NCBI RefSeq assembly: GCF_048593235.1
Contig: NC_133620.1
Location: forward strand, 292,531,765-292,595,764
DNA: 64,000 bases
Reading direction: 5' to 3'
From: Sminthopsis crassicaudata
Taxonomy: Eukaryota
A program made the translations under genes and the position numbers. Positions within the stretch are counted from its first letter, which is position 1, and each line of letters starts with the position of its first letter. Below are positions 7,640 through 45,600 of the stretch, in pieces. Below the pieces are notes generated by a model. It had not been told where the DNA came from, made no database searches, and saw only the letters and a program-made list of their open reading frames with translations.

Positions 7640-8090
7640 AGTTTGTAAAAAAAATTTTTCTCCCTTTCCCCAAGCCCTCCCCTAGATGGCAAGTAGTTCA
7701 AGATATGTTAAACATGGTAGAAATATATGTTAACTCCAAATATACATACATACTTATACAATTATCATGCCACACAAGAAAAAAAGAGAAGCAAAATAAA
7801 ATGCAAGCAAAAAAGAGTGAAAATACTATGTTGTGAACCATACTCGAGTGTAGGTGTAGATGGTTCTCTTTATCAATGAACAATTGGAACTAGTTTGAAC
7901 CATCTCATTGTTGAAGAGGGCCACGTCCATCAGAACTGATCATCATATAATCTTGTTGCTGTCATGTATAATGATCTCTTGGTTCTGCTCATTTTACTTA
8001 GCATCAATTCATGTCTCTCCTCGCCTCTCTGAAATCATCCTGTTGTTCAGAACATATTCCATATTAACATTCATATGCCATTATTTTAAT
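7640..8090 (-). mobile_element. L1 3' end, inverted
   Basis: ccctcccctagatggcaagtag...gggccacgtccatcagaactgatcatcatataatcttgttg: typical dasyurid L1 3'UTR, antisense. Confidence 0.75.
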
Positions 8091-31000: not shown

Positions 31001-34000
31001 TTTCAAAAGTTCAAAGTTAAAGACTGTGCAAAGCCTTGAGATTTAGCAATTAAGACATTAATGATGACATTGGAGAAGACAGTTTGAGCTTAGTCATGGG
31101 GTCAGAAGCTAGGTTACCAAGGGCTGAGAAGTTATTAGGTGGTGAGGAAGTGGAGACAATGGCTACAAATGGTTTTTCCTAATTTTTAGACGTTTGTGAG
31201 AAATAGTTTCAGGAAATAATAGGGGGTCAAGTTTTTAAGGAAGAGAGACTTAATTATGTTTGTAGCAGCTGATAGCAAACAAGATTATAAAGGGGACAAT
31301 CAAGGTGGTAGCCTTTAGAGAATAAGATGAGAATAATAGCTAACATTCCCATAGTGTTTTATATATTGTGATTCATTTAGTCCTCACAGCCACCCTATAA
31401 GGTTGGTAATATTATTTTCCCCATTTTATAGATGAAAAAAGTGACAAATATTAAATGACTTATCTAAGGTGATACAGCCTAAGTATATGAGGCAAAATTT
31501 GACCTGAGGTCTTCCTGACTCTGAAGTTCTATGAACTATCCATCTAGCTTTCTGCAACGATGAGATAAAGGGTACAAGTAGAGAGATTGGCCTTGAAAGC
31601 ACATTCTTTTCAGAAAATGGAGCAATGGAGTTAAAATGAGTCATTTTGAGGTTTAAAGGAAGGGAGCAGGAAAACTATTATCACTAAGCACAGTTAAGCA
31701 CACTTAAGCACTAGTTCCTGAAGTAGGTAAAGAGGACTATGAAATTTGGAGGTTGCTTACTCTAAAGTCCACATGGAGCTTCTGATCCCGGCAGATGGGG
31801 CAAGGATTTCCAGCAACTTTGTTCCCTCGCTGTAGGGGATAAAAGAGATGGGCAGAAACTTCAGGAATAGCACACATGCCTTTTGTCAAGGTTCGTGCAA
31901 TCCCACCCTGTCATTCCTGAATCTCTGTGCCAGAGACCCAATTCCTTTTCTTTACTACTCACAATGCATGTCTTACGGGTTCGCTGTGGTGGAATGCCAC
32001 CTTTATGGTTTCTTTGATAGTCAGCCCAGACTGGACGGGAACCATATCGAGTCAGGTATTCTAAAAAGGAAAAGAAAGGAAGGGAAGAAAAAATAAGAGT
32101 TTATTAAACATTTACTATATGTCAAACACTTCAAAAATTTGATCTACCATATATCTGGTCTACAACAATTACTAGAATAATTACTTTTACAACTCCATTC
32201 TATTTTTGTAATCTTAAGTTCATATTTCCTTTTAGTTCAAACTAAGTCATACCACAAAATTGCCCTAGATATATCTATGCCTCTGCTAATACTATTCTCA
32301 ATGCCTGGAATATTTTCTCTTCCCTTCTAATCTATACCTTCTAATCCAATCCTTCAAAATCCAATTAAATTGCCATACCTTTCTTTGAAAAGCAATTCTT
32401 ACATCCACATTTGGTACTAATCTTTTCCTCCTTTCTCACCAGAGAAGTCTATAGTCTTTTTTTTTTGTACCTCTCCTATAGTAATCACTTTAAATTTTTT
32501 GTTCTGTTTTAGTAATTTTCAAAAACTTATTACCACCCTCATGTTTCCTTTAGACAGCATACCCTATTCATCTTTGCATTCTTTCATTATTTAATAAATA
32601 TCTAAGCCAAAGTTTAACAAAAAAAATAATTTTGTCTTAATGAAATTTATTTCCTATAAGACAAAGATTGATAGCTACAATACACAAGAATATATAACAA
32701 ACATATTAATGTCCCCAAACAAAATGTTATGTAAGAAAGAGTCAAAGAAGGGCACTTCTAAGGAGAAGTGGGATGGGAAGGATGTATAGAAATTCAACAT
32801 ATTTTGTTTATTGGATTACTTGCCATCTAAGCGAGGGGGGAAGAGAAAGGGAGGGAAGAAACTTGGAACACAAAGTTTTGCAAGGGTGAATGTTGAAATT
32901 ATCCATGCATATGTTTTGAAAATAAAAAGCTTTAATTAAAAAAAAAAAAAGAAAGACAGACATGTTGTAGGCATTCTAATCCCAGGAAACAGTGTGTGAA
33001 AAGGCTGATGTGAGAAGTATAGAATATATGTAAAAAGTGAAAAATAATAGATAAGGCTGGAGAAAAAGGGTATTGTTAGATTGTATAAACTTCAGGACTT
33101 TGACTTTGGTTCAGTGTTCACTGAAGAACAATTAAGAAGAAAGCATTCCTATCTGGTCCATTCTTTTTCTTGGGTTCAACACACCCATAATCTTTTGAAC
33201 TGATGGCTCTGTCTCCCCCTTAGTCTCCACATTTTCCTTTCCCTCTTCCCATATTTTCCTTATGGTGGTACCTTCTGTCTCCAGATATTCCCACGGAGCA
33301 TTCTGATAAGGGGAGACAGGAATGGAAGTTTCTTCCTCAGGGGAAACTTTGGTGCATAATGCCTGGGGAGTAGTCTATGAAAAAGAAAAGAGTAAGGTTT
33401 ATGAGGAAAATGAGATATCTTGGTTTTGTCCCCAATGATACTTAAGGTTTTGTAAACATGTCAAAAGTGGTAGAGTGATGTATAGAAGAATATGTACTAA
33501 TCTTGATCTTAGCCCCTTAAAGACCCAAAAGCACTGAAGTAATGTGAGTTGATAAATAATTAAATTTCTGGGAAAGCAGCTATATACATGGTGCCTCAAA
33601 AGTCTTAATACAGTTTTAAGCTTTCAAGGACAAAAACAACATTCCTACTCTGTTCATTCTTCTCTTTTAGGTTCTACCTGCAGGATTTAATTACCATTAA
33701 ATTAATACATAAGTTAATATTAAGAGAACTGACATTGAAAAAGATACCAAAAAAGATACCATTTTTTAATGGATATTCCTAAAAAAAAAGTAGTATCAGA
33801 AGAAAAATAAAGTGAATTTGGTAGATGTTTCTGGTGATAAAAGAGAAAGGAAAGAGATACCTAAATTCCTAAGCGTTTGATATAGTATCCCGAAAAAGAT
33901 TATGTTAGGATCACAAGATATGTGTGATGTACATGTGATTCCCCTATCCCAACTCTGTCTCTGAATTACTGACATTATCCTGCTTAAAAAAAAAAAAAAA

Positions 34001-34931
34001 AATCAGTTTCCCATTCCAGAAGAATGAGCAACCAGAGTCCCAAAGCTGAGATCAAAAACCTCAGACCTATAATTAATCCCATAGTGACCTTAATCTCCTC
34101 ACTCCTGAGGCTAACTTGCCCCATTTCAGGGAATAGCAACTGTGGGAAGCAGCTTTCCCCCCCTTTCCCCTCCATCTAAGGATCTTCCAGGTGGTGAGTT
34201 TTGAAGCCAGGGCTTCAAGAGACTTGGGCAGTGGGGAACCTGGTGGAAAGTTTATGGATAGTGTTCTCTCAGACAAGAAACCTTCAGGGCCAGAGAGCAG
34301 TATTTTGAGCTCCTCAGATCCTATCTACATTCAGAGGAGCGTAGAGATAAGTACATCAATGTAGTGGGAGGATCACTAGCCCCACATGTGCTAGTTAGGC
34401 CTGCATCTCCATGGATAGAAGGAAGTAGAGGAGTTTTCAAGAGTTAACTATCTGAGTGGGGCAGGAAAAGCATTCTCAGGTCAAGGGAACAAGGTACTTT
34501 GGAAGAGAAAGAAAGGGGGGAGGGGCTGCTACCGCAACTAGGAGAGCAAAGAGCTCCTCCTGGCGCTCCATGGCAACGCAGCACTGTGAATATAAACAAA
34601 CTTAAAGACTACGTAACACTCTTCAGTACGAGCCCTAAAACTAAGAACAGGATATAAGAGACTGGCTAGTGGGAGGGCAATAACCAAAACAAGACCAGAA
34701 AGGGGTGAGCTTTCTCCTTCCTCTCCCCAGCCGCAGGAAGGAAAACTCTTTCCGGGCAGTGTGCAGAAGGAAAGGCAGCCAGCCGGAGCCCATTCAAACC
34801 AGGGCTGCCCGCTGCAAAGAGGGAAGGAACGCGAGAGAGGAAACGGCAGATACCTGCACCCAGTAGACACCTCTGACAGGTGTGAGACCCAAGCGCCGCC
34901 TAAGCAGCAGAGTTAGGAGAGAGGACGCCAT
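25094..34931 (-). CDS. MRPS18B: Mitochondrial ribosomal protein S18B (mS40), 7 exons, 253 aa
   Basis: Exons 34854-34931, 33272-33374, 31963-32060, 31761-31829, 26142-26208, 25702-25761, 25094-25380; in frame, GT-AG. Motifs [56 protein letters not shown]; the Zn-ligand Cys residues are retained. Confidence 0.96.
27100..27880 (+). mobile_element. L2 LINE ORF2 remnant in MRPS18B intron 4
   Basis: ctaaactcttggagaaggctg...ttcaactgaaattactctc...catcctttttgacctgcagcctttgatact: degenerate L2 RT region. Confidence 0.6.
28100..28660. mobile_element. Cluster of marsupial SINEs (Mar1-type and RTE-associated Mar/WALLSI-type)
   Basis: ttttcttggcaaagatattggagtagtttg...cattttacagataaggaaact (Mar1); ccagttgtcctgatctgtatctggccactggacccagatggctctggagg...gaagaacaaacaataacaa (RTE-type SINE). 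Family names approximate. Confidence 0.65.
28820..28945 (-). mobile_element. Internally deleted WSINE1
   Basis: poly-T, then ggctgaggcaattgaggttaagtgactt...tttgaactcgggtcctcctgacttcagggctggtgctcaatccactgcaccacctagctgccc. Confidence 0.88.
32795..32950 (+). mobile_element. L1 3' end
   Basis: ttggattacttgccatct...ttttgcaagggtgaatgttgaaattatccatgcatatgttttgaaaataaaaagcttt plus A-tail. Confidence 0.8.
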
Positions 34932-35570
34932 CTTGGTGTACGTAGGAGTGGGGGAATCACCAGACTGAGCATGTCTGTTAGCAGGCTGGGTGGGGCTGAT
35001 GTGAGAAACGCACGTTGCCGAGACGTGGCTATGTGCGCATGCGTCAATGCGTAGGGGCGAAGACGACCAATTTTAACTGCGTCATAATAGAATTGGCCTT
35101 CAAAATTACCATTGCTGTAGCCACTTCGCTATGGTTCCTAGATCCATTACACAATCTTTTGCATATGAACAAATTTGTGGTTGATTTTTGGCTCCGGTTC
35201 TACTAGTGCGCATGCGCAGGGGCGATTAGGCCTACTTAGGGTGAGGTTTGACGGCGAAGGGGTGGGAAAGAAGATGATCGGGGAAGGAAGGGAGGGTGGG
35301 CCCCAACCAATCGTCGTAACTCTCGTCTCGAGCAGAGGGTTGGGTAGAGAGCGGAAGAGAGAGTTGAAGGATAAGTGTAGCATAGGTTGTGATACGACAG
35401 CCAATCAGCTTACGGTTCCTTGAAGTGGCTGACCAATTAGCTTGTGCCTCGCGCACAATGGCGCAGGGTGTCAGTATATCGTGAGCGCGCTAGTGTGCGC
35501 GGGGCGGTGCCCCTGTATAAAAGGTGTCGGCGGAGCGAGCAGTCGCCATTCTGGGGTTCGTTTAGAGGTA
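34540..35570. promoter_or_regulatory. Bidirectional CpG-island promoter of MRPS18B (-) and PPP1R10 (+)
   Basis: NRF1 TGCGCATGCG at 35034-35043 and palindromic TGCGCATGCGCA at 35207-35218; CCAAT at 35307, 35401 and 35433; GC box 35501-35507; TATAAAA 35516-35522; YY1-like CGCCATTCT 35544-35552; YY1 AAGATGGCG over the MRPS18B ATG; RFX-like GTTGCCATGGAGC (minus) 34565-34577. Confidence 0.85.
35541..35567 (+). other. PPP1R10: PPP1R10 non-coding exon 1 (5' end approximate)
   Basis: About 25 nt downstream of the TATA box; ends at the consensus donor GAG|GTAAGT. Confidence 0.7.
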
Positions 35571-35787
35571 AGTACTGGTTCTTTGTCGGTTGGTATGGTG
35601 CGTGGCGGCATAGTGGTAGAAGAAGCTAAAAAAAGGTGGTGGGGGTGAGAGTGGAGTTTGTTTTAGTGCTTCTTCTTGGAATCCAGAGGATGCATTTTGG
35701 AAAGCGTAGTGGGCTGTAAATGAGACACAAAAAGATTAAAGCCAATTAATGACATTATTGTTTCCTCCTTTATTTTCCTCTTCCCAG

Positions 35788-36261
35788 GTTCGAATTTAAT
35801 CGGAGGAAACAGACCAGCCACGAGGAAAAAAGCTGCCGTAACAGCACCTAAAGGATCCTTCGAGGGGGGGGAAGCAGCAGCTACCAACCCAACCACTTGT
35901 GTCTTCTCTGCCCCATCGCCCTATCTTGTTTCCCGCCCCTTCTCCCAGCCCAACCTGCTTGGGACTAAAATCTGGCTGAAGGACCATCACCACAAAATCT
36001 ATCAAAAATAATCAACCACCCTTCCTCCAACTCCCAAGTCCCGTCAAAGCTGCCCATCCAGCGTCTCCTTTTTGAATCCACTCAGTTTTTTGTTTTTTTG
36101 TTTTTTTTTTTGTTTCTAAGACCCTCTCCTTAAGTGGAGGGGGGGTAATGAATCCTGAGTTGGCTTTATTTTTTTAAAAGAGACTTTTTGATCCAATGAG
36201 GCCCCCAAGTAATTAAGCTTTGGGTCCTGGTTGGTTTTATTTTTTCTCCAAATTTTAACCC
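35788..36261 (+). other. PPP1R10: PPP1R10 non-coding exon 2 (runs into the assembly gap)
   Basis: Strong acceptor tttcctcttcccag|GTTCGAATTT; the sequence follows the recalled human 5'UTR (CCACGAGGAAAA, CCAACCACTTGTGTCTTCT, GACTTTTTGATCCAATGAGGCCCCC) up to the Ns. Confidence 0.75.
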
Positions 36262-36411
36262 NNNNNNNNNNNNNNNNNNNNNNNNNNNNNNNNNNNNNNN
36301 NNNNNNNNNNNNNNNNNNNNNNNNNNNNNNNNNNNNNNNNNNNNNNNNNNNNNNNNNNNNNNNNNNNNNNNNNNNNNNNNNNNNNNNNNNNNNNNNNNNN
36401 NNNNNNNNNNN
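36262..36411. other. Assembly gap (150 N)
   Basis: Run of N directly visible. Confidence 1.
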
Positions 36412-39400
36412 AATAATTGAGCTGGAGAACGACCAATCCGGTCGCTTGAGTCTCCATTAAAAAAACAAAACAAAACATTAGGTCTTAAAAGTCTTGTTCT
36501 CTCTCCCCTACCACCTCCCTCTTCCCTGCCCTGGAGCAGGCATGGAGAGGGTGGGGGGGCCGACAAGTGAGGATTTTCTTGATGGTTAACCCTTGGTAAT
36601 CCAGCCAATTTTCTAGACTGCCAAAGCCATAAAAGTTCGATACTTTTTATAAGGAGGAATGGGATCCCATCCTCTGGATGCCAGCAGTCTTTCGGAAGGG
36701 TTAATGAGCTCACATACAAAAGACGTGGATCTTGTGGCCTAAAAGTCCCACTTCTTTGTGTGTGAGACAAGCAGGGGCGCCTTTCAATTGGCCAGATTAA
36801 TAAGCAATCTGTACATAAAGATTGCAGGGTAAGGAGATGCGAAGATAAATATTAGCTGGCTACGGCTTAATGGTTAAATCCTCTCGTTAAATTTTAATGT
36901 AAGTTGCTTGAGGTATATAATTTGTGTGCTTTACATAGGTGGCAATCTGCGAATAAAGATTGCAAGACACTTAAGCCATAGTAAAATAGTGCCAATACAT
37001 CCAAGTATTAGTTGGGAAGGTAAAGAATGTCTTGTAATTGTTGCAGCTTGCAGAGCTTTTTTTTTTTTTTGAAGTTATAACTTTTAACTTGATTTTTAAG
37101 ATGGGTGCAGTTAACGGGGGAGGGATATAAAGTGGGAGGGGGGGCAATGTGGGGAATAAGGCGTGTAATTTTAAAAGGCCATTTAGTGCAATTTTGAATG
37201 CTAGATTTCTAAAAAATTTGTGTCGTTAAAAGGAATTTTTTTTTTCTTCCCTGCTTCAATATGGCGACTTTTCCTTGTCCTTTTGTCTCTTCCGAGCGGC
37301 GTTGCAGGTTGTGTCTTAAACCATATTTTTCCTCCTGTCTTTTACCCACCTTGACCTCCTTTGTTGGGAGGGGCCCAATTCCTCTCATTTGTAGTATAGA
37401 AACGGGGGTGGACTGTATTAGCAGTTTGATCTCCAACTGCAAATTATCTACCCCAGGCAGGAGAAACAACTTTTAAGTAACATTTTAAATTGTCTTTTTT
37501 TTTTTTTTTTAACCAAATCATGAGGTTTAATAAGTTAAACACAATTTGTTTTTGTTTTTACTGGGGACGGGTTTTAATGGGCTGTTTGTACTGTAACCTT
37601 TACGGCAAATCGTAGATATTTTTTTTCCTCCTTGAATCTCTTCTCCATTGCAAGATGGCGTCCCTGCTTTGTTGTTTTTCTCCTTCCTCTTCCCTCTGGC
37701 CAGCCAGAGCATAGTGTTAGTTTTGGAGGTTAGTTAAGGGGGAGGAGCAGTCTGGAAAGGTGATGTAATCGGATTTCTTTCACTCCCCTCCACCCTCCTG
37801 AAGCTCCACCCCCCTCAGTTTTGCTTTTTGAGCCATGATCAAACTTGGAAGTAGTGGAGTCCTGGCACTTGCATACCTTTTCCATCTCTACATATTTGAT
37901 CTTAAATTTTTTACCCCCATTCTTTTATTTCACAAAGCACCCCATTTTCTCCAGCAAGCTAGTAGAAATTTAACATATCTAGAGGTTGTTTCTTCAGTGG
38001 ATATTTATGGGTAGTTTTTCAATTTAGCAAAAGGATCATTTTTTCTCCAGTTTTAGAATATCCTAGAAATTCCTTCACATATACACAAACTGGGGAACAA
38101 TAAGTTTATTTCCCTTTAAGGATAACCCAAGTAGCATTGAACCCAAAGGATAGGAATAATCTGGGTGAGTTTATAGTCTTGAATAAGAGAAATCTCTAGT
38201 CTATGAATTTCTATTGTTAGGTTTTTACTGGAGCTAGTCTTTAGGCAAGGGACATTTTTACCTTTTGTAAGGTAAGGGTGGGTACTGGAAGGCTTTCCTC
38301 TAAAATTCCCATCTTTTCTGGTTTTGGGGTAAAACTCTTTTGTGTTCCGTGCTGTACCACCTCCAGTTGCTTAGCCTCCTGTACATTGGTACTAGGATGA
38401 GGAGTGAATCTTTAGGAAAAAGGCGGCAGTTGTAAACTCAAGGCAGGGGGAGTCAAGCTTCGTTTTCTGGTAAGCAAAACCTTTCTGGTATTACATTTCA
38501 CAACCTTCATTTCTGTTTTCCAATTAATCATTTTTAAAATATTTTTTACCTTTTTTCTCCTGCCCAAACTTACTGCTGATAATGGAAACATGGTGTTCTC
38601 CATTTTCAACTCATGCAGTGCTATAGCAACCAGTGCATGTCCAAGCCATGGCAGTGAGGCTGGTGTTTGTGACCTGTCCTTTTTTTTTTTTTTTCTAATT
38701 TTAAAAAACTTTTAGGTTCATGGCAAAGTTGAAAGGCCTGACCATGAATATTCCTTTGTATAGTACCACTTGTCCAGCTTAAGTAAGTCCATGTGCTCTT
38801 AAGATGGACCTATTTACACTCCTATTTACAGGAGGTTTTATTTTAAGAAAAACTAAACACAAATTGTGTGTTTGCTATATACCTGGGGATATGAATATAT
38901 TACCCCCTTGAATTCCTGAACTAGATAGGCAAGTAATTTTGGGAGACTGTCTGCAGTGTGAAAATTGAGGAATAAAGGAGTCTTAAGGAACCAACTTGGA
39001 AATGCCAATCTACTAATCAGTTTGAGATGTGTCTTGGGTACCATAACTGCCTTTTTACAAAGCTCTTGATTCTGCCATTTCTTAAAAGGCAAGCAGACCT
39101 GAATCCCTCTGTGACCCAAGAGTACTTGATAGATAAAAGTTTGGTAGAGATAACAGATGACAGAATGGGTCCACAACTTTATGGCTTAATGGTAGGCTAC
39201 AATTCATATCTTTCTCCTAGAGGGTATAGAGTTCGAAGTTTCTCTTATGCCAGGGAAATATACAACTCAAAATTATTTAACTCTTTAATAGGTGCCTTTA
39301 AGATCTCTAGGGGGAAAGGAATGTAAATTTTAGGCCATTAACAAAATTTAAATTTCCAGAAGTGCTGCAGCAAAGTAGGCTTATAAACTTCATTTCTCCT

Positions 39401-42400
39401 CTTTTTTATTAAAAGGAAATTTTATCTTTGGGATAGGCAATTTTAAGAGGTTTGAGTTTCACATGTTAACCCTGAACCCACTCAATTCATGAGATTTTAA
39501 TTTCACTCCAGCCAGTTAATTGATAAAGATTTTCACACTTTGTTTAGTGAAGCCAACAGAACTCTTCCAGAGAAAGGCTTTTTAATCCGGATCTCTTGAG
39601 AACCCCTAAATCATTTCTATATATTGCTCCAAATTTTCCCAGAACTTTAGAGGAAAGAAAGGCTTTGAGGATAGAGTATCCAGATCAGTATAATGATCTG
39701 GCAGCTAACGGCTCTTTAAGAATCAAGGCTAGGTAGACAATGGCTTAAAGAAAAAACCTGAAGGTTCTGAGAGAATTTGTTGATTTTTTCTTTACTTCTT
39801 TGGTCAGGGACTCTCTTGCTTTCCCTCAAAAACTTGACCCGGTAACTGGGATTTATGAATCTTGTCTTTTCTCAAAGGAGAGGAAAATTTATTATTTTCC
39901 TCATCTCTACCACATATTTTTCTAAGTTCTCTCATTAAGGAAATGAGCTTACATGGTTTCATATGACCTCAAACTTAATTACTCCTGATTTTTACATGCC
40001 AAGCTCTAAGACAGGAACATTTATTTTTAATATCCAGATACTATGTATTTGGGAGTCTTATCCAATTGAGAGCACTATTTTATGCTTAGCTTTTTTGCTG
40101 TAGTCCTGTAAAAGGAACACATAACTCTTAGTTTGCTCTCTGGTTTAATGGCTCACTGGTTCTGCTTTTATTATTACCCTCTTTGAGATTACATGTCATA
40201 TACAGTATTTGAAAGTGAAAGTTTGTAGATTAATTGAATCCTGAACTTCTAACTGGATGAAAGCTAGTTTTCCTGGGAAGTTACCTCCTTTTCTCCAGAG
40301 TCAAAAATGGTGAGAGTCCTTTTGTGGTAATTAAAACTACTCATTGGTTTGAGGAAGCTTGGGTCATCCCATGTTTAACCTCTTCTGCTGTGGTGGCTAC
40401 ATTTATTTGCTGCTATTTTTGTTGCTTAGCTTTTGTATGAGTGAGATATCTCAGTTATTTTCTGTTCCTGTTGATGATTTTAAATCTCTTGGCTTGAGTT
40501 ATCTTGTTTTCTATTTATTAATAACATAATAATTGGGATTTCCCTCAAGTCCTTGAAAATAAGAGCTGGGGGTCTATTGGAATAGCAGACCTAGTTTTTA
40601 CCATTAGTTGGAAATAGGAAAGATTCATTGATTTGGGGACAAAAAGAATAAATGTTAAGTATTGTGGGATTCCTATACTTGGTTCTTGGGTCAAGTATGT
40701 GTTGGAGTAGTATGGAAAACTTCCATTTTAAGTCTTCTGAGAATTGTTACTCCTCAGGTTCTGTATCCTCAACAGAAAATCTGGCATGAAGTATATGCAT
40801 TTTGCTTAACTGTCTCTTGGTGGTTGATAGTGTTTGTCATTCAAACTTAAGTTGCAACTTCACACCTATCAAAAAGCCTCTGTATAACTGCTCCATACTA
40901 ATTGAGAAAAAAAATCCTTTATTTTTGCACACTGAAGTTTACATAAGGATTAATAGATCTGACAAACCATCAAATTGATAATTTTTATCAGAATTTCATT
41001 CTACTAGAGAAATATTATTTGAATCTTCTTTTTCTCCCACCTTTGGTCCACCTTACTCCCTTCTTACCAGAAGAAACAAAGAGGCAACATTGGTAATTCA
41101 ATAGAAATCCCATACAATTTCTATAGCTGTTTTCCCCCTTCATTTCCATAATATTCAAAGCATCAAATTGCTAAGCCCAAGAAAGAGTTATCTGCAATTG
41201 TCTTTTTATCTTGTTCTTTGATTCCTATGCTCCTTCCATGTCCTTTGTTAACTCTTACACACTAGGGAGAACTGGAAGATAAGTGATCTTTGAATATAAT
41301 ATTAAGGGTGCTATCCTTAAAGCACATTTCTTTGTTTTCATGGGAAAGGCCTCCTTTCTCTGCCTCAGTTTACTAGAACTGGATAACTATAGATTTCCAA
41401 GGAAAACTAAGGTTTTTCCCCTGAAACATGTCTACACTGTCTTAGGGATGTTAGGTGAAACCCCTGGGCAATCATAGGAAAAGAATTTCCCCTTTTTTAA
41501 TAAGTTTATATCAGCCTTAAGCCCCATGCACAGATGTTCCTCTGGCTCTATAAAGGGCTCATGTTTGGAGAAATATTGCATGAAAACTATCTTATCAAAT
41601 CCTATATAATTTGTAGAATCTTCCATCATAACTATTCATACCTTAATCTTTCTCTTAATAGGAATGGTTCCTTTTGGTTCATTTTCTATCTTTTGACATA
41701 GAAATCTAATTATAGTCACTTTGTTTTTAACTTAACCATTTTTCACTTCTAGCTCCCATATATATTCAGGCTGTGAATTCCCATAAATAGACTTTCTTGG
41801 GAATTGAGGAAATTGATGAAATTCTTTTTCAGATTACCACCATTACTTAGGAAATTCCAAGCTGACCAAAAATTTAAGAAATAAAAATTATTCTAGTTAT
41901 TAAAGAGCAACTTCACAGAGCTCAAACCTTTGTTCCACGTGAAACAGAACAAATATCTCTAGTCTATAGCCTCTTTAATATTGTCAGTCTACTTTTTCCA
42001 GTTTTATGTTTCCCTTTCCAAGCATCAGTAGTCTTTTCATTGTAATCTGTCATATTCTATTTGTGCATTGTGATAATGCCTGAATCTTGGAGGACAACTT
42101 TTAAGAGCATCATTGTACTTTCCATTCTCTAAAGCTAAACTTACAAGAATTTAGAACAGAAACGTTCAAATGTGGTACTGTGATACTGTATTTCCTAGTT
42201 TTTAAGTCTTGTTATATAGGTAGCTACCTAGGAATAAATATTTCAGATCTAGAAATATTGAACCAAATAAATTAAAAAACCACACAGAAGATTCATCTGA
42301 CATGGTAAAATTAAGTGGCCTTTTTCTGGCTTTTTTTTTTAAAATAAGAGTCTTGGTCTCTTATCTGTAGCCTGAGGGAGTTCAGCCTTTCTAATAGAAT

Positions 42401-42694
42401 GAAATAGAAAAGAAAAGGAAAGATTTTTCCAATATTCACATCATATAAGTGTTTTATGCTTTGCCCTAATTTCTCTTATTAGTAACCAAAATATCTTGAT
42501 TCTCTTCACTTCTGAATCATTGACTTGGTGGTTAAATAACTTTGATCGCTTAATGGGTAGAATTTACATGTGCTATTTCATTTGTTAATATCAGATGGAT
42601 GATCAAAAAAAAAAAAAAAGGTATTATTGAAAATAATCTTGGTATAATCTTTGATACATTTATTCAATCTTCTCCCCACCCAGGTATTATCATC

Positions 42695-45600
42695 ATGGGC
42701 TCTGGCCCCATTGACCCTAAAGAACTCCTTAAGGGTCTAGACAGTTTCCTTGGTAGGGATGGAGAGGTCAAAAGTTCAGAGGGAATCACCAAGATCTTTA
42801 GGTATGTATAAATTGCCATTGGAATGTATTTTAGGATTAAATGAACAAAAAAGCATGGTGCATGACTACTTATGGTTGTAATAGGTAGGCTTAAGAACAA
42901 TGATGTTAGGAAACAAGTTTTTTTTATTAACAAGTTATTAAAACATTTCTGGTCACCATGGAGTTTTAGTAGCAGTGGCAGTTAATCTAACATTAAATAG
43001 CTATCATTACCTTCCCCTGATTTCCCATCTAAGGCCTGTATATGGAATCCATATATACAGGCTTTTGTCCCTTTTGGATTGCAGCTGATTATCCAGGACC
43101 CCAAATCCTAAAAGCTAGTTCAGTGATGGGATGTCTGATGCTATTTTGTATTATTGTCTTAGATCATATAATTTTATCTTTTACCAGCCTCAGTTTTACC
43201 AGCATGGTTGATTTTAGTTTAAAAAATGGAGGAGATTCAACAACACTTAGACCCTTGCTAAAAATAGGTTGACAGAGTAATATCAAGAACAAACACGGTG
43301 ACTAGTGTTGGTGGGTGTTAGATTGTGACTACTGATTACTTGGAAGGTGAAAATATAGTCTTTGCAAAGGAAATAATAATGCCTAATGCGCCAAGATCAG
43401 TTATATATTTCTCTCCTATCAGAGTACCCTCTATTGTCCTATAAATATCTATTTTTCTAGAAAGATATGTTTCCTCCTTGTTTCCTAGTTTTAGACCCCA
43501 AGTCCCAAGACAGTTATGTTCCTCTGGATGAAAGATGTGTTTCTAACTCTAACCTTAATTCACTTTCCCTTGTAGCCTGATGAAGGAAGCTCGAAAGATG
43601 GTGAGCCGCTGTACATACCTAAATATTCTCCTGCAGACCCGTTCACCAGATGTACTGGCCAAGTAAGTGGGTAACTAGATGTCTAGGAAGTAGAGATGGA
43701 GTAGAATAGGGGATTAAGGCATTGAGGGAATAGACGCATAGAACTTCTGAATTCTGATATTACTTAATATGTTTGCAGGTTTATCAGAGTTGGTGGTTAC
43801 AAGCTCCTTAATAACTGGCTAACTTACTCAAAGACGACCAACAACATACCTCTCTTGCAACAGATTCTGCTCACCCTACAGCACCTACCCCTTACTGTAG
43901 ACCATCTCAAACAGGTACCTCTTTAGGTTTTTAATCTTACCTGAATGTTTCCCATAACTGATAAGAAAATTGCATTTTGTCTGTAAATCAACCCCATTTC
44001 TGGGGCTTATAAGTAGGGGGAGGTAAATTGTAAGGATGGATCGAAACATTTTCTCCTTATACTTCTCTCTTTTTTCCCTTTTCTTAGAACAATACAGCCA
44101 AACTTGTGAAGCAGCTGAGCAAGTCAAGTGAAGATGAAGGTAGATTTTTTCTTTGTTCCCTTCATGTCTATTTTTTCTCCTTATCAGTTGATACCCCGTT
44201 TTTTATCCTCTCCACTTTCTTCTTAACTTCTTTCCTTTTTGGTCTTATACCTGACCAAATCCCTTTGTTTTTCTATAATCTCTAGAATCTAATCCTTAGA
44301 ATTCATTATTTGATGGTAAGGATTCTTTAATTGCATTTTTATCAGTAAATTTCATAGTAACAAAACATAATAACAAAATTAAGCACTTTTTTTTTGTTTG
44401 TTTGTTTTTGACTTTAATATCAGTTTCTCCTTCCCTCCACCTACCCTTTCTTCCCCTTCAAGAAAGCAAGAAAAACAGTACTAATTACTTAATTAGGCAT
44501 GTCAGTCAGCACTCTTAAATCCATCCCTTCTGTATCAGGAGTAGGATAAAGTATTTTTATTATGAGTTCTCTGTAATTGTGGTTGCTCATTGTGTTGATC
44601 AGAGTTCTCAAGACTGTATTTCCATATTGTGTAAATTGTTCTCCTGATTCTGCTCAATGCACTTTGCATCCATACAACTTTTTGAAATATTTTGAAAATT
44701 TCCTTATAATACCTAGTACATCTCTTCCACTTTTAAATTTTCATATGGTATGACTTCAAGTCTTAGTATTATCCTGATCACCACTTTCTGACTCACGCTA
44801 TGCTTCTAAAATGTAACATAGAATTTTATAATAGTTCTTCCAGATGTGTGGTCTCCATCAGTCCAAGTGCACAGGGATAATTCTGTTCTTTATTCTAGAT
44901 ATTTATGTTAATGTAATAGTTACCCTATTATTCTGTTGACTCATTGAGCTTAAGTTCACTAAAAACCACTTGATCTTTGTCATAAAGACTTTCTTGGCCA
45001 TGGCTTTTCCATGCCATTCTCTTTATTCAGTAGATTCTAAACCCCCAACCCAAGTCAATATTTCCTTTTCTCATCTTCTGCCCTTTCTACTTCACTGCCC
45101 ACTTTCCTTAAGAACTAGAATATTTTTATAAAGAAAGAGAAAAATGCATTACATTGAAGTAAAGTACCCAGCAACATATGGGGGACAGGAAAGACAAAAG
45201 AAAAGGAAGAGGACTGTAACTTTATGACGAGTTAAGTCAGTCATTTTGAGTATAATTGACTTCAAGTTGGTGATCCATGGAGGTTGCCCTTTGATTTAGG
45301 ATAGCAAATTATTCTGAATTATAACTCAAGAACGTCTACAGTGGTGGAATGATCTTTTATTTTCATAAAGGATATATATACGGAGCCATCTTTTTCTCCA
45401 TTCATATAATCTTTCTTGGGATGTTTGTTTCAAGTTGCTTATTGGGGTTATTTACAAAGGAGTTGTGAGGACAAGAGAGTAGGGCATAGAAATGGGCAGA
45501 AGTAGAGTAATAGGAAGGGAGTCCCCATGACTGTGTCCATCTCTGTCCTGTTCTTCTGTTTCTAAAATTACTTCTGTTTCCCTTGAAGAACTCCGGAAAT

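What the first reader, a model, noticed from the sequence alone, without database searches (positions are those of the whole stretch)
36804..36982. Twin hairpins displaying poly(A)-signal hexamers early in PPP1R10 intron 2: candidate autoregulatory attenuator
Seen: two 22-nt units 138 nt apart, GCAATCT-GTACATAA-AGATTGC (36804-36825) and GCAATCT-GCGAATAA-AGATTGC (36942-36963), 19/22 identical. Each is a 7-bp stem with an 8-nt G-NNN-ATAA loop. Unit 2 exposes AATAAA (36952-36957); unit 1 exposes CATAAA and TGTACATA (UGUA/Pumilio-type). A further helix (36859-36870 with 36971-36982, one mismatch) encloses unit 2, ATGTAA 36897-36902 can pair with TTACAT 36931-36936, and a second UGUA lies at 36898. 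Stems are fixed while only loop positions 2-4 vary, which looks like selection on structure. Known: PNUTS-PP1 promotes Pol II termination, and termination factors such as PCF11 and yeast Nrd1 limit their own expression through promoter-proximal premature termination. Inference: a structured intronic PAS ~1.4 kb from the TSS could be a PNUTS feedback sensor. Alternatives are a dyad DNA-binding site or an intronic ncRNA (an ANANNA at 36843 and ACA at 36967 are present, but the geometry is atypical for H/ACA). Weakness: the GU/U-rich tract (37028-37070) is farther from the hexamer than a typical downstream element.
Basis: partly seen in the sequence, partly recalled or inferred. Interest (0 to 1): 0.72.

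Follow-up and report, generated by a model that had tools for sequence, protein, structure and literature searches.

The report
Ancient twin hairpins in PPP1R10 intron
Two 22-base hairpin motifs with identical stems, early in a non-coding intron of the PNUTS (PPP1R10) gene, have identical stem letters in marsupials, placental mammals and a bird, so they are very likely a working control element; whether they act as an early stop signal for the gene's own transcript is untested.

Summary
GCAATCT-N8-AGATTGC stands at 36804-36825 and 36942-36963, and each copy folds as a 7-bp/8-nt hairpin.

A spliced mRNA contig places both copies about 500 nt into 5'UTR intron 2, inside a roughly 1-kb block conserved between marsupials and placentals at least as well as the first coding exon.

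Both units are present in Tasmanian devil, rat, tenrec and a crane. All 28 stem positions are invariant. Unit 1 is 22/22 identical everywhere. In unit 2 only loop positions 1-3 vary, so the AATAAA hexamer is untouched. In the crane the flanks have diverged, so the units themselves are the constrained core.

There is no Rfam hit and no paper describing them in the library searched.

Invariant stems give no covariation, so RNA and DNA action cannot be separated rigorously. A neighbouring hairpin (36709-36766) shows compensatory and wobble changes that favour the sense strand.

Estimates: functional cis-element about 0.9; RNA-level about 0.5; specifically a PAS attenuator about 0.2.

The parts
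36804..36825 (+). Unit 1 / hairpin HP1: stem GCAATCT/AGATTGC, loop GTACATAA. Holds CATAAA (36814-36819) and the Pumilio-type TGTACATA (36810-36817).
   Evidence: It is 22/22 identical in devil, rat, tenrec and crane.
36942..36963 (+). Unit 2 / hairpin HP2: same stem, loop GCGAATAA. AATAAA is at 36952-36957.
   Evidence: The stems and AATAA-A are invariant in 5 species. Loop positions 1-3 read GCG, ACG, AGG, AGG and AGC.
36826..36834 (+). 5' splice-site-like / U1-type site AGG|GTAAGG, directly 3' of HP1.
   Evidence: Read from the sequence. It lies inside the 49-nt run 36791-36839 that is invariant in 4 mammals. It is not kept in the crane.
36709..36766 (+). Upstream hairpin HP0: CA-rich 5' arm, UG-rich 3' arm, 12-14 bp.
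   Evidence: (I15). It is invariant in mammals. In the crane 7 pairs changed and 5 still pair (2 double changes, 3 wobble). The sense strand is favoured.
36873..36885 (+). Conserved single-stranded motif GTTAAATCCTCTC between the units.
   Evidence: Invariant in mammals. The crane has TGTTAAACTCCTCG just after its unit 1.
36898..36903 (+). TGTAAG: a UGUA motif that also reads as a GTAAGT-type 5'ss-like site, 54 nt before AATAAA.
   Evidence: UGUA is kept in the mammals. It reads GTAATT in eutherians and TGTAAA in the crane.
37025..37044 (+). Conserved GU-rich tract GAATGTCTTGTAATTGTTGC. It can pair with 36959-36969, which would compete with HP2.
   Evidence: (I21). It lies 70-90 nt after the hexamer, beyond the usual distance of a downstream element.
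36413..37384 (+). Conserved 5' part of intron 2 that holds all of the above. Places 36577-36613 were left out of all work.
   Evidence: 77-78% identity to rat and tenrec over about 770 nt, against 72-80% for the first coding exon. Profile.
35788..36262 (+). Non-coding exon 2. Its 3' end and donor lie in the masked N run 36263-36412, at about 36302 by offset from the devil. The N run was not read or filled.
   Evidence: The mRNA contig L005 aligns from 35786 and joins directly to the coding exon. The rat unitigs end at the exon-2 donor.
42684..42801 (+). First coding exon of PPP1R10 (ATG at 42695).

Best explanation
The two units are an ancient pair of cis-regulatory hairpins, at least as old as the amniotes. 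They act on the sense-strand PPP1R10 pre-mRNA, about 350-500 nt into 5'UTR intron 2.

Each is a 7-bp stem whose loop and 3' arm carry an invariant MAUAAA-GAUUGC. Together with an upstream hairpin (HP0) they form a structured module. This module most likely serves as a sequence-specific protein-binding platform that decides the fate of transcripts still carrying intron 2.

The mechanism I commit to is this. The hairpins gate recognition of a weak promoter-proximal poly(A) signal (AAUAAA in HP2, CAUAAA in HP1). In mammals a U1-type site next to HP1 helps. A fraction of transcripts is then cut and terminated early instead of being spliced to the coding exon, which sets the PNUTS level.

Shown: the sequence, the fold, the intronic position and the deep conservation. 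Inferred: action at the RNA level, any binding factor, use as a poly(A) site and feedback by PNUTS.

Probabilities: functional cis-element about 0.9; RNA-level element about 0.5; PAS or termination attenuator about 0.2; other RNA-level role, such as control of splicing, retention or the conserved alternative 5'UTR exons, about 0.3.
For: - Both units are present with invariant stems in the window, devil, rat, tenrec and crane. In the crane the flanks have diverged, so the units are the constrained core.
- Variation is confined to loop positions 1-3 of unit 2, and the invariant part begins exactly at AAUAAA.
- The constraint is asymmetric and has the same orientation in both copies. A symmetric dimer site on DNA would not predict this.
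- The hairpins fold well.
- HP0 keeps pairing in the crane through 2 double changes and 3 wobble changes. It is more stable on the sense strand: consensus -23.7 versus -13.6 kcal/mol.
- Sense-strand RNA signals are invariant in mammals: the U1-type site lies inside a 49-nt invariant run, and UGUA stands at -54.
- The position is intronic and 1.26-1.4 kb from the start.
- There is a precedent: the conserved first intron of PCF11 carries conserved tandem AATAAA signals that autoregulate by premature termination (PMC6458999).
Against: - The stems never vary, so there is no covariation. Invariance fits DNA recognition equally well.
- The HP0 arms are CA/UG-repeat-like, and slipped registers also pair.
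- Mammals have no GU/U-rich element within about 50 nt of the hexamer.
- The last A of the hexamer is base-paired.
- The U1-type site is absent in the crane.
- Conservation runs 400 nt past unit 2 and includes YY1-like DNA motifs.
- Rat RNA-derived unitigs run through the element without a branch. This is weak evidence, because contigs drop rare forms.
- No reads could be laid.
Confidence: 0.5

Rival explanations
1. DNA-level element. The palindromes are binding sites for a transcription factor, dimeric or composite, in a conserved promoter-proximal intronic enhancer or alternative promoter of PPP1R10 (or of the divergent MRPS18B). On this reading the hairpin-forming potential is a by-product.
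For: - All 28 stem positions are invariant over the bird-mammal split, as expected for direct base readout.
- The block lies 1.3 kb from a bidirectional promoter.
- The block also holds invariant YY1-like motifs: AATATGGCGAC at 37258-37268 and AAGATGGCG at 37652-37660, with a crane counterpart.
- Conservation extends beyond the units.
- The MATAAA core also resembles CDX, posterior-HOX or TATA-like motifs (own knowledge, untested).
Against: - I could name no known factor motif for AGATTGC. No motif library was available.
- Half-sites 15 bp apart centre to centre are unusual.
- The spacer is constrained asymmetrically, in the same direction in both copies.
- The neighbouring HP0 shows sense-strand wobble changes.
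Confidence: 0.3
2. The units belong to a stand-alone small non-coding RNA gene hosted in the intron, for example a snoRNA- or scaRNA-like gene or a Pol III gene.
For: Three ordered conserved hairpins (HP0, HP1, HP2) span about 280 nt.
Against: - No Rfam family at gathering score or E <= 10 in the window, and none in four orthologous loci.
- 22-nt hairpins are far too small for H/ACA arms, and there are no C/D boxes.
- The T-run at 37057 is not kept in eutherians.
- The spacing between the units varies: 123, 138 and 188 nt.
Confidence: 0.05
3. The twin units have no function as hairpins. They are either a chance or small-duplication product, or an exapted remnant of an ancient repeat conserved only as part of a generic conserved non-coding block.
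For: Twin same-stem hairpins arise in 5.5% of simulated 64-kb windows. Many conserved non-coding elements derive from old repeats (own knowledge).
Against: Both copies survive with invariant arms in five species while the crane flanks diverge. There are no other copies in the window or in the loci.
Confidence: 0.05

Closest known systems
PCF11 PAS1: conserved tandem AATAAA signals in the conserved first intron, autoregulating by premature cleavage/polyadenylation and termination (PMC6458999)
   Same: The host is a termination or 3'-processing factor gene. The setting is a conserved promoter-proximal intron. There are two conserved PAS-type hexamers. The logic would be negative feedback.
   Different: Use of PAS1 and its feedback are shown experimentally; here neither is shown. 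The hexamers here sit in the loops of two identical-stem hairpins 123-188 nt apart. One is CAUAAA. The mammalian downstream context is poor. The intron is in the 5'UTR.
Structured or U1-suppressed promoter-proximal poly(A) signals, such as the HIV-1 5' poly(A) hairpin with the major splice donor (own knowledge)
   Same: AAUAAA is held in a hairpin close to the transcription start, with a nearby 5' splice-site-type U1 site (in mammals) that could silence it.
   Different: That case is a viral leader, with a single larger hairpin. Here the U1-type site is missing in the bird, although the hairpins are kept.
U1A (SNRPA) polyadenylation-inhibition element: two similar structured boxes that bind two U1A molecules next to a PAS (own knowledge)
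   Same: A duplicated structured motif is associated with a poly(A) signal. The 3' arm plus the next bases read AUUGCAG and AUUGCAA in mammals, 6/7 of the U1A heptamer. AUUGCAG matches the first 7 bases of the U2 stem-loop IV loop.
   Different: Here AUUGC lies in the stem, not in a loop. Positions 6-7 are not kept in the crane (AUUGCGG, AUUGCUA). The location is an intron, not a 3'UTR. I do not file it here.
Palindromic dimeric transcription-factor sites in conserved non-coding elements
   Same: Perfect inverted heptamers, invariant over about 320 million years, in a promoter-proximal conserved block.
   Different: No matching factor is known to me. The spacer is long (8 bp) and has directional constraint. 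There are two copies in direct orientation.

Membership tests
Autoregulatory intronic poly(A)/premature-termination attenuator (PCF11 PAS1 type) | Lies in a promoter-proximal intron of a termination or 3'-processing factor gene | tested here: met
   The units are about 500 nt into 5'UTR intron 2 of PPP1R10 and 1.26-1.4 kb from the start.
Autoregulatory intronic poly(A)/premature-termination attenuator (PCF11 PAS1 type) | Conserved canonical hexamer(s) | tested here: met
   AATAAA in unit 2 and CATAAA in unit 1 are invariant in 5 species.
Autoregulatory intronic poly(A)/premature-termination attenuator (PCF11 PAS1 type) | Competent PAS context: a U/GU-rich element within about 40 nt of the cleavage zone and upstream UGUA | tested here: inconclusive
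   UGUA stands at -50 to -54 in mammals and is absent within 100 nt in the crane. Positions +15 to +50 are A-rich in mammals, and the conserved GU-rich tract lies only at +70 to +90. The crane has U-rich runs at +12 to +45.
Autoregulatory intronic poly(A)/premature-termination attenuator (PCF11 PAS1 type) | Polyadenylated 3' ends map just downstream | not testable with these tools
Rat RNA unitigs pass through unbroken, which cannot exclude rare ends.
Autoregulatory intronic poly(A)/premature-termination attenuator (PCF11 PAS1 type) | Usage responds to the dose of the encoded factor | not testable with these tools
   This needs a PNUTS degron or overexpression with 3'-end or nascent-RNA sequencing.
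Rfam RNA families (snoRNA, scaRNA, miRNA, cis-regulatory) | Covariance-model match at or near the gathering score | tested here: not met
   There are 0 hits at gathering score in the window, only chance-level hits at E <= 10 in 36300-37500, and none in the orthologous regions of 4 loci.
Evolutionarily supported RNA secondary structure | Compensatory base-pair changes in the stems | tested here: inconclusive
   HP1 and HP2 show 14 pairs x 5 species with no change at all. The neighbouring HP0 has 2 double and 3 wobble changes in the crane, but its arms are repeat-like.
Dimeric palindromic transcription-factor site | Symmetric half-sites with an unconstrained or symmetric spacer, and a match to a known motif | tested here: inconclusive
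   The half-sites are perfect inverted heptamers, which meets the first part. The spacer is constrained asymmetrically, which does not meet the second part. No motif library was on hand, so the motif match was not tested.
Pumilio response element | UGUANAUA in an accessible part of a cytoplasmic mRNA | tested here: inconclusive
   UGUACAUA at 36810-36817 is invariant in 5 species, with 7 of its 8 nt in the loop. However, it is intronic in the main mRNA, and unit 2 lacks it.

The most novel reading that the evidence does not exclude
The twin hairpins are a bistable RNA switch kept since the amniote ancestor. Each presents or hides a poly(A)-signal hexamer. Together with a U1-type site and a competing downstream helix (36959-36969 with 37028-37038), they would let the cell's termination capacity (PNUTS-PP1) set how many PPP1R10 transcripts end about 1.4 kb from the start. 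That would be a second autoregulated termination-factor gene after PCF11, and one that works through a structured poly(A) signal.
Probability: 0.2. Interest if true: 0.85.

Novelty: new variant of a known kind. Interest (0 to 1): 0.62.

Why it matters
PNUTS-PP1 is a central brake and termination factor for RNA polymerase II, yet I found no paper describing how its own dose is set.

This is a 22-nt motif kept letter for letter in duplicate from birds to marsupials, sitting in the first kilobase of the gene's 5'UTR intron. It gives a small, sharply defined target for testing.

Stem, loop and hexamer mutants could show directly whether the gene is attenuated like PCF11, whether a new hairpin-binding protein is involved, or whether this is a DNA control site.

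The same intron also holds other deeply conserved pieces: HP0, YY1-like motifs, and an alternative exon with a conserved intronic tail. The PPP1R10 5'UTR therefore looks like a dense regulatory hub.

Tried and rejected
- **Read laying.** The N run 36263-36412 was not filled.
- **Exact look-ups of ORFs.** ORFs around the element from the window, devil and rat were looked up to reach RNA contigs. All were absent except one rat ORF, P0244.
- **Rat contigs.** The rat contigs are unspliced pre-mRNA covering the whole intron. They show neither a splice nor a poly(A) branch at the element, and so give no support for a special retained or terminated isoform.
- **Other marsupials.** Possum, wallaby and wombat loci returned no DNA. 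Opossum isoform X2 was not on record.
- **Turtle and anole.** Their 5'UTR region lies outside the 10-kb flank, so they are uninformative and do not show absence.
- **Third unit.** The unit at 37188-37209 was rejected.
The enclosing helix and the ATGTAA/TTACAT helix are marsupial-only.
- **H/ACA reading.** Rejected.
- **ATG at 36660.** It gives MGSHPLD, which recalls the true N-terminus MGSGPID. The ORF stops after 27 codons and the rat reads differently, so this is coincidence.
- **ORF from ATGGCG at 37261.** A 2-nt indel in the rat breaks the frame, so it is not coding.
- **U1A/U2B''-type heptamer reading of AUUGCA(G/A).** Positions 6-7 are not kept in the crane and the bases lie in the stem.
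- **Metagenome pattern scan.** I did not run one for unit 1, because an amniote-invariant 22-mer would mostly return host, possibly human, contamination.
- **Human sequence.** No human contig was fetched or used. L005 is a non-human contig: its product is 880 aa like bat isoforms. L008-L015 match the rat genome at 99.8%.
- **Literature.** The searches found no description of this element.
Full report
**What is in the sequence.**

- Reading 36500-37300 and the repeat finder confirm two 22-nt units. One is at 36804-36825 (GCAATCT GTACATAA AGATTGC). The other is at 36942-36963 (GCAATCT GCGAATAA AGATTGC).
- The units are 138 nt apart and 19/22 identical. They differ only at loop positions 2-4.
- Each folds on its own as a 7-bp stem with an 8-nt loop: -9.5 and -9.4 kcal/mol, z about -4.
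- AATAAA is at 36952-36957, so five of its bases are in the loop and the last A is the first stem base. CATAAA is at 36814-36819. TGTACATA is at 36810-36817.
- The degenerate pattern is expected 0.01 times per shuffled window.
- In an unbiased count, twin perfect 7-bp hairpins sharing a stem within 500 nt occur once in the window and in 5.5% of simulated windows. Chance alone is therefore not excluded for a scan of many windows, and conservation has to decide.
- A weaker third copy at 37188-37209 does not fold.

**Gene context.**

- The genome is a marsupial. The window is 88-98% identical to the Tasmanian devil locus L001, so it comes from a close relative of the devil, not the devil itself.
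- A TATA-like box at 35516-35522 is followed by exon 1 (donor 35567/35568). Non-coding exon 2 starts at 35788.
- The first coding exon is 42684-42801, with ATG at 42695.
- A spliced Logan mRNA contig from a non-human mammal (L005; its product of 880 aa matches bat isoforms) joins exon 2 directly to the coding exon.
- By offset from the devil, the exon-2 donor lies at about 36302, inside the masked N run 36263-36412. I did not fill that run.

**Conservation.**

- I reached orthologous loci through the protein. One exon was sent to the search of protein representatives. The full-length hit went to the search for homologous proteins. Isoform lists came, and the loci from the look-up of encoding contigs.
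- Window 35762-37384 is one long block conserved with rat and tenrec at 70-78%. That equals or exceeds the first coding exon at 72-80%.
- In the four-mammal alignment, the longest invariant run between 36614 and 38500 is 49 nt (36791-36839). It holds unit 1 and the following AGG|GTAAGG.
- Both units are present in the devil, both rat assemblies, the tenrec and the crane Grus americana.
- Unit 1 is 22/22 identical everywhere.
- Unit 2 keeps both arms and AATAA-A. Its loop positions 1-3 read GCG, ACG, AGG, AGG and AGC.
- In the crane the flanks have largely diverged and the spacing is 188 nt, against 138 in the marsupials and rat and 123 in the tenrec. The two units are thus the most constrained pieces of the region.
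- The turtle and anole loci do not reach the 5'UTR region, so they are uninformative.

**RNA or DNA.**

- The 14 stem pairs never change in five species. There is no covariation, and invariance fits base-specific recognition of either DNA or RNA.
- Three observations lean towards the sense RNA:
  - The constraint inside the spacer is asymmetric and points the same way in both copies. The invariant part is MATAAA plus the 3' arm.
  - A neighbouring hairpin, HP0 (36709-36766), is predicted independently in the window, rat, tenrec and crane. In the crane 7 of its 14 pairs changed, yet 5 still pair, through two double changes and three wobble changes. It is clearly more stable on the sense strand. 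Its arms are CA/UG-rich and slipped registers also pair, so this is a lead, not proof.
  - Sense-strand processing signals are invariant in mammals: a U1-type site right after HP1 and UGUA at -54.
- Other observations point to DNA:
  - The block continues 400 nt past unit 2.
  - It contains invariant YY1-like motifs at 37258-37268 and 37652-37660, with a crane counterpart.

**The poly(A)-attenuator idea.**

- In its favour:
  - The hexamer boundary coincides with the boundary of variation in unit 2.
  - The position is promoter-proximal, and the host gene is a termination factor.
  - PCF11 is a precedent. Its conserved first intron carries conserved tandem AATAAA signals that autoregulate by premature termination in human cells and zebrafish (PMC6458999).
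- Against it:
  - In mammals the 15-50 nt after the hexamer are A-rich. The conserved GU-rich tract (37025-37044) lies 70-90 nt away.
  - The U1-type site is missing in the crane.
- The GU-rich tract can pair with 36959-36969 (11 bp including one G-U; the rat keeps it through a U-G). That pairing competes with HP2, and in the window and tenrec the extended fold prefers it. A switch is therefore conceivable but unproven.

**Transcript evidence.**

- Twenty runs, two of them on record as RNA and several very small, hold 69-94% of the sampled words of 36413-37412. The intron start is therefore present in assembled RNA.
From then on I worked beside those places.
- Rat Logan contigs that carry an intronic ORF (P0244) are collinear with the genome over the whole of intron 2. 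They stop at the k-mer overlap with the exon junctions. This is what unspliced pre-mRNA gives in RNA-seq assembly graphs.
- Those contigs show no branch at the U1-type site or after AATAAA. Contigs drop rare forms, so this is only weak evidence against abundant use.

**Known families and literature.**

- There is no Rfam match in the window, at gathering score or up to E = 10 around the element, nor in four orthologous loci.
- Full-text searches for PPP1R10 or PNUTS combined with ultraconserved, intronic polyadenylation, detained intron, autoregulation, premature cleavage and polyadenylation, IPA isoform or telescripting found no description of this element. Searches for the unit sequence itself also found none. 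PPP1R10 is not named in the PCF11 paper or in its supplementary files held in the library.

**Verdict.**

- My best reading is a sense-RNA hairpin pair that controls processing of intron 2 (about 0.5). The PAS-gating version is my committed mechanism, at about 0.2 absolute.
- A DNA-level factor site is a serious rival (about 0.3).
- Nothing here shows feedback by PNUTS.
- The element is a compact, directly testable candidate for how a core termination factor sets its own level.

Noticed in passing
window 36709-36766: A conserved hairpin (HP0) lies 38 nt upstream of unit 1, with a CA-rich 5' arm and a UG-rich 3' arm. It is invariant in 4 mammals. In the crane 7 of 14 pairs changed and 5 still pair (2 compensatory, 3 wobble). 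The sense strand is favoured. Its 3' arm overlaps a possible polypyrimidine tract and AG at 36773.
   Followed up: partly
window 38367-38515 (crane L007 about 7900-7960): A second deeply conserved island lies in the same intron. It looks like an exon: acceptor CTCCAG|T at 38366/7 and donor TCTG|GTAAGC at 38469/70, 103 nt long. About 45 intronic bases after the donor are almost invariant from marsupial to crane. The exon body is conserved in mammals and carries a short upstream ORF whose frame is not kept in the rat. It is probably a regulated alternative 5'UTR exon.
   Followed up: partly
window 37258-37268, 37302-37313 and 37652-37660: Several further motifs are conserved. AATATGGCGAC and AAGATGGCG are YY1-like. 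TTGCAG|GTTGTG is 5'ss-like and invariant in mammals, and the crane has counterparts (CAAGATGGCGCGG, TTACAG|GTTGGG). Together they could mark an internal promoter or first exon.
   Followed up: no
window 36959-36969 with 37028-37038: An 11-bp helix (one G-U) forms between the 3' arm of unit 2 plus AAGACA and the conserved GU-rich tract. It is mutually exclusive with HP2. The rat keeps it through a U-G. It is the preferred fold of the extended segment in the window and tenrec.
   Followed up: partly
L007 6678-6697 (crane): In the crane, a loop change and a flank change together create a competing perfect 8-bp hairpin, CUAGCAAU-AAAG-AUUGCUAG, over unit 2.
   Followed up: no
window 36263-36412: The masked N run covers the 3' end of exon 2 and its splice donor, at about 36302 by offset from the devil locus. 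It was left unfilled.
   Followed up: no
window 34000-42900 vs L001: Identity to the Tasmanian devil varies by segment. It is 87.8% in the distal intron, 91.7% around the promoter, 95.1% over 36614-38500 and 98.2% over 36413-36576. The window species is a close relative of the devil, and the start of the intron evolves more slowly than its surroundings.
   Followed up: partly
L003 19991-20059, 23238-23306, 23603-23671 (rat): There are three weak tRNA-model hits downstream of rat Ppp1r10. They are most likely tRNA-derived SINEs and are unrelated to the finding.
   Followed up: no
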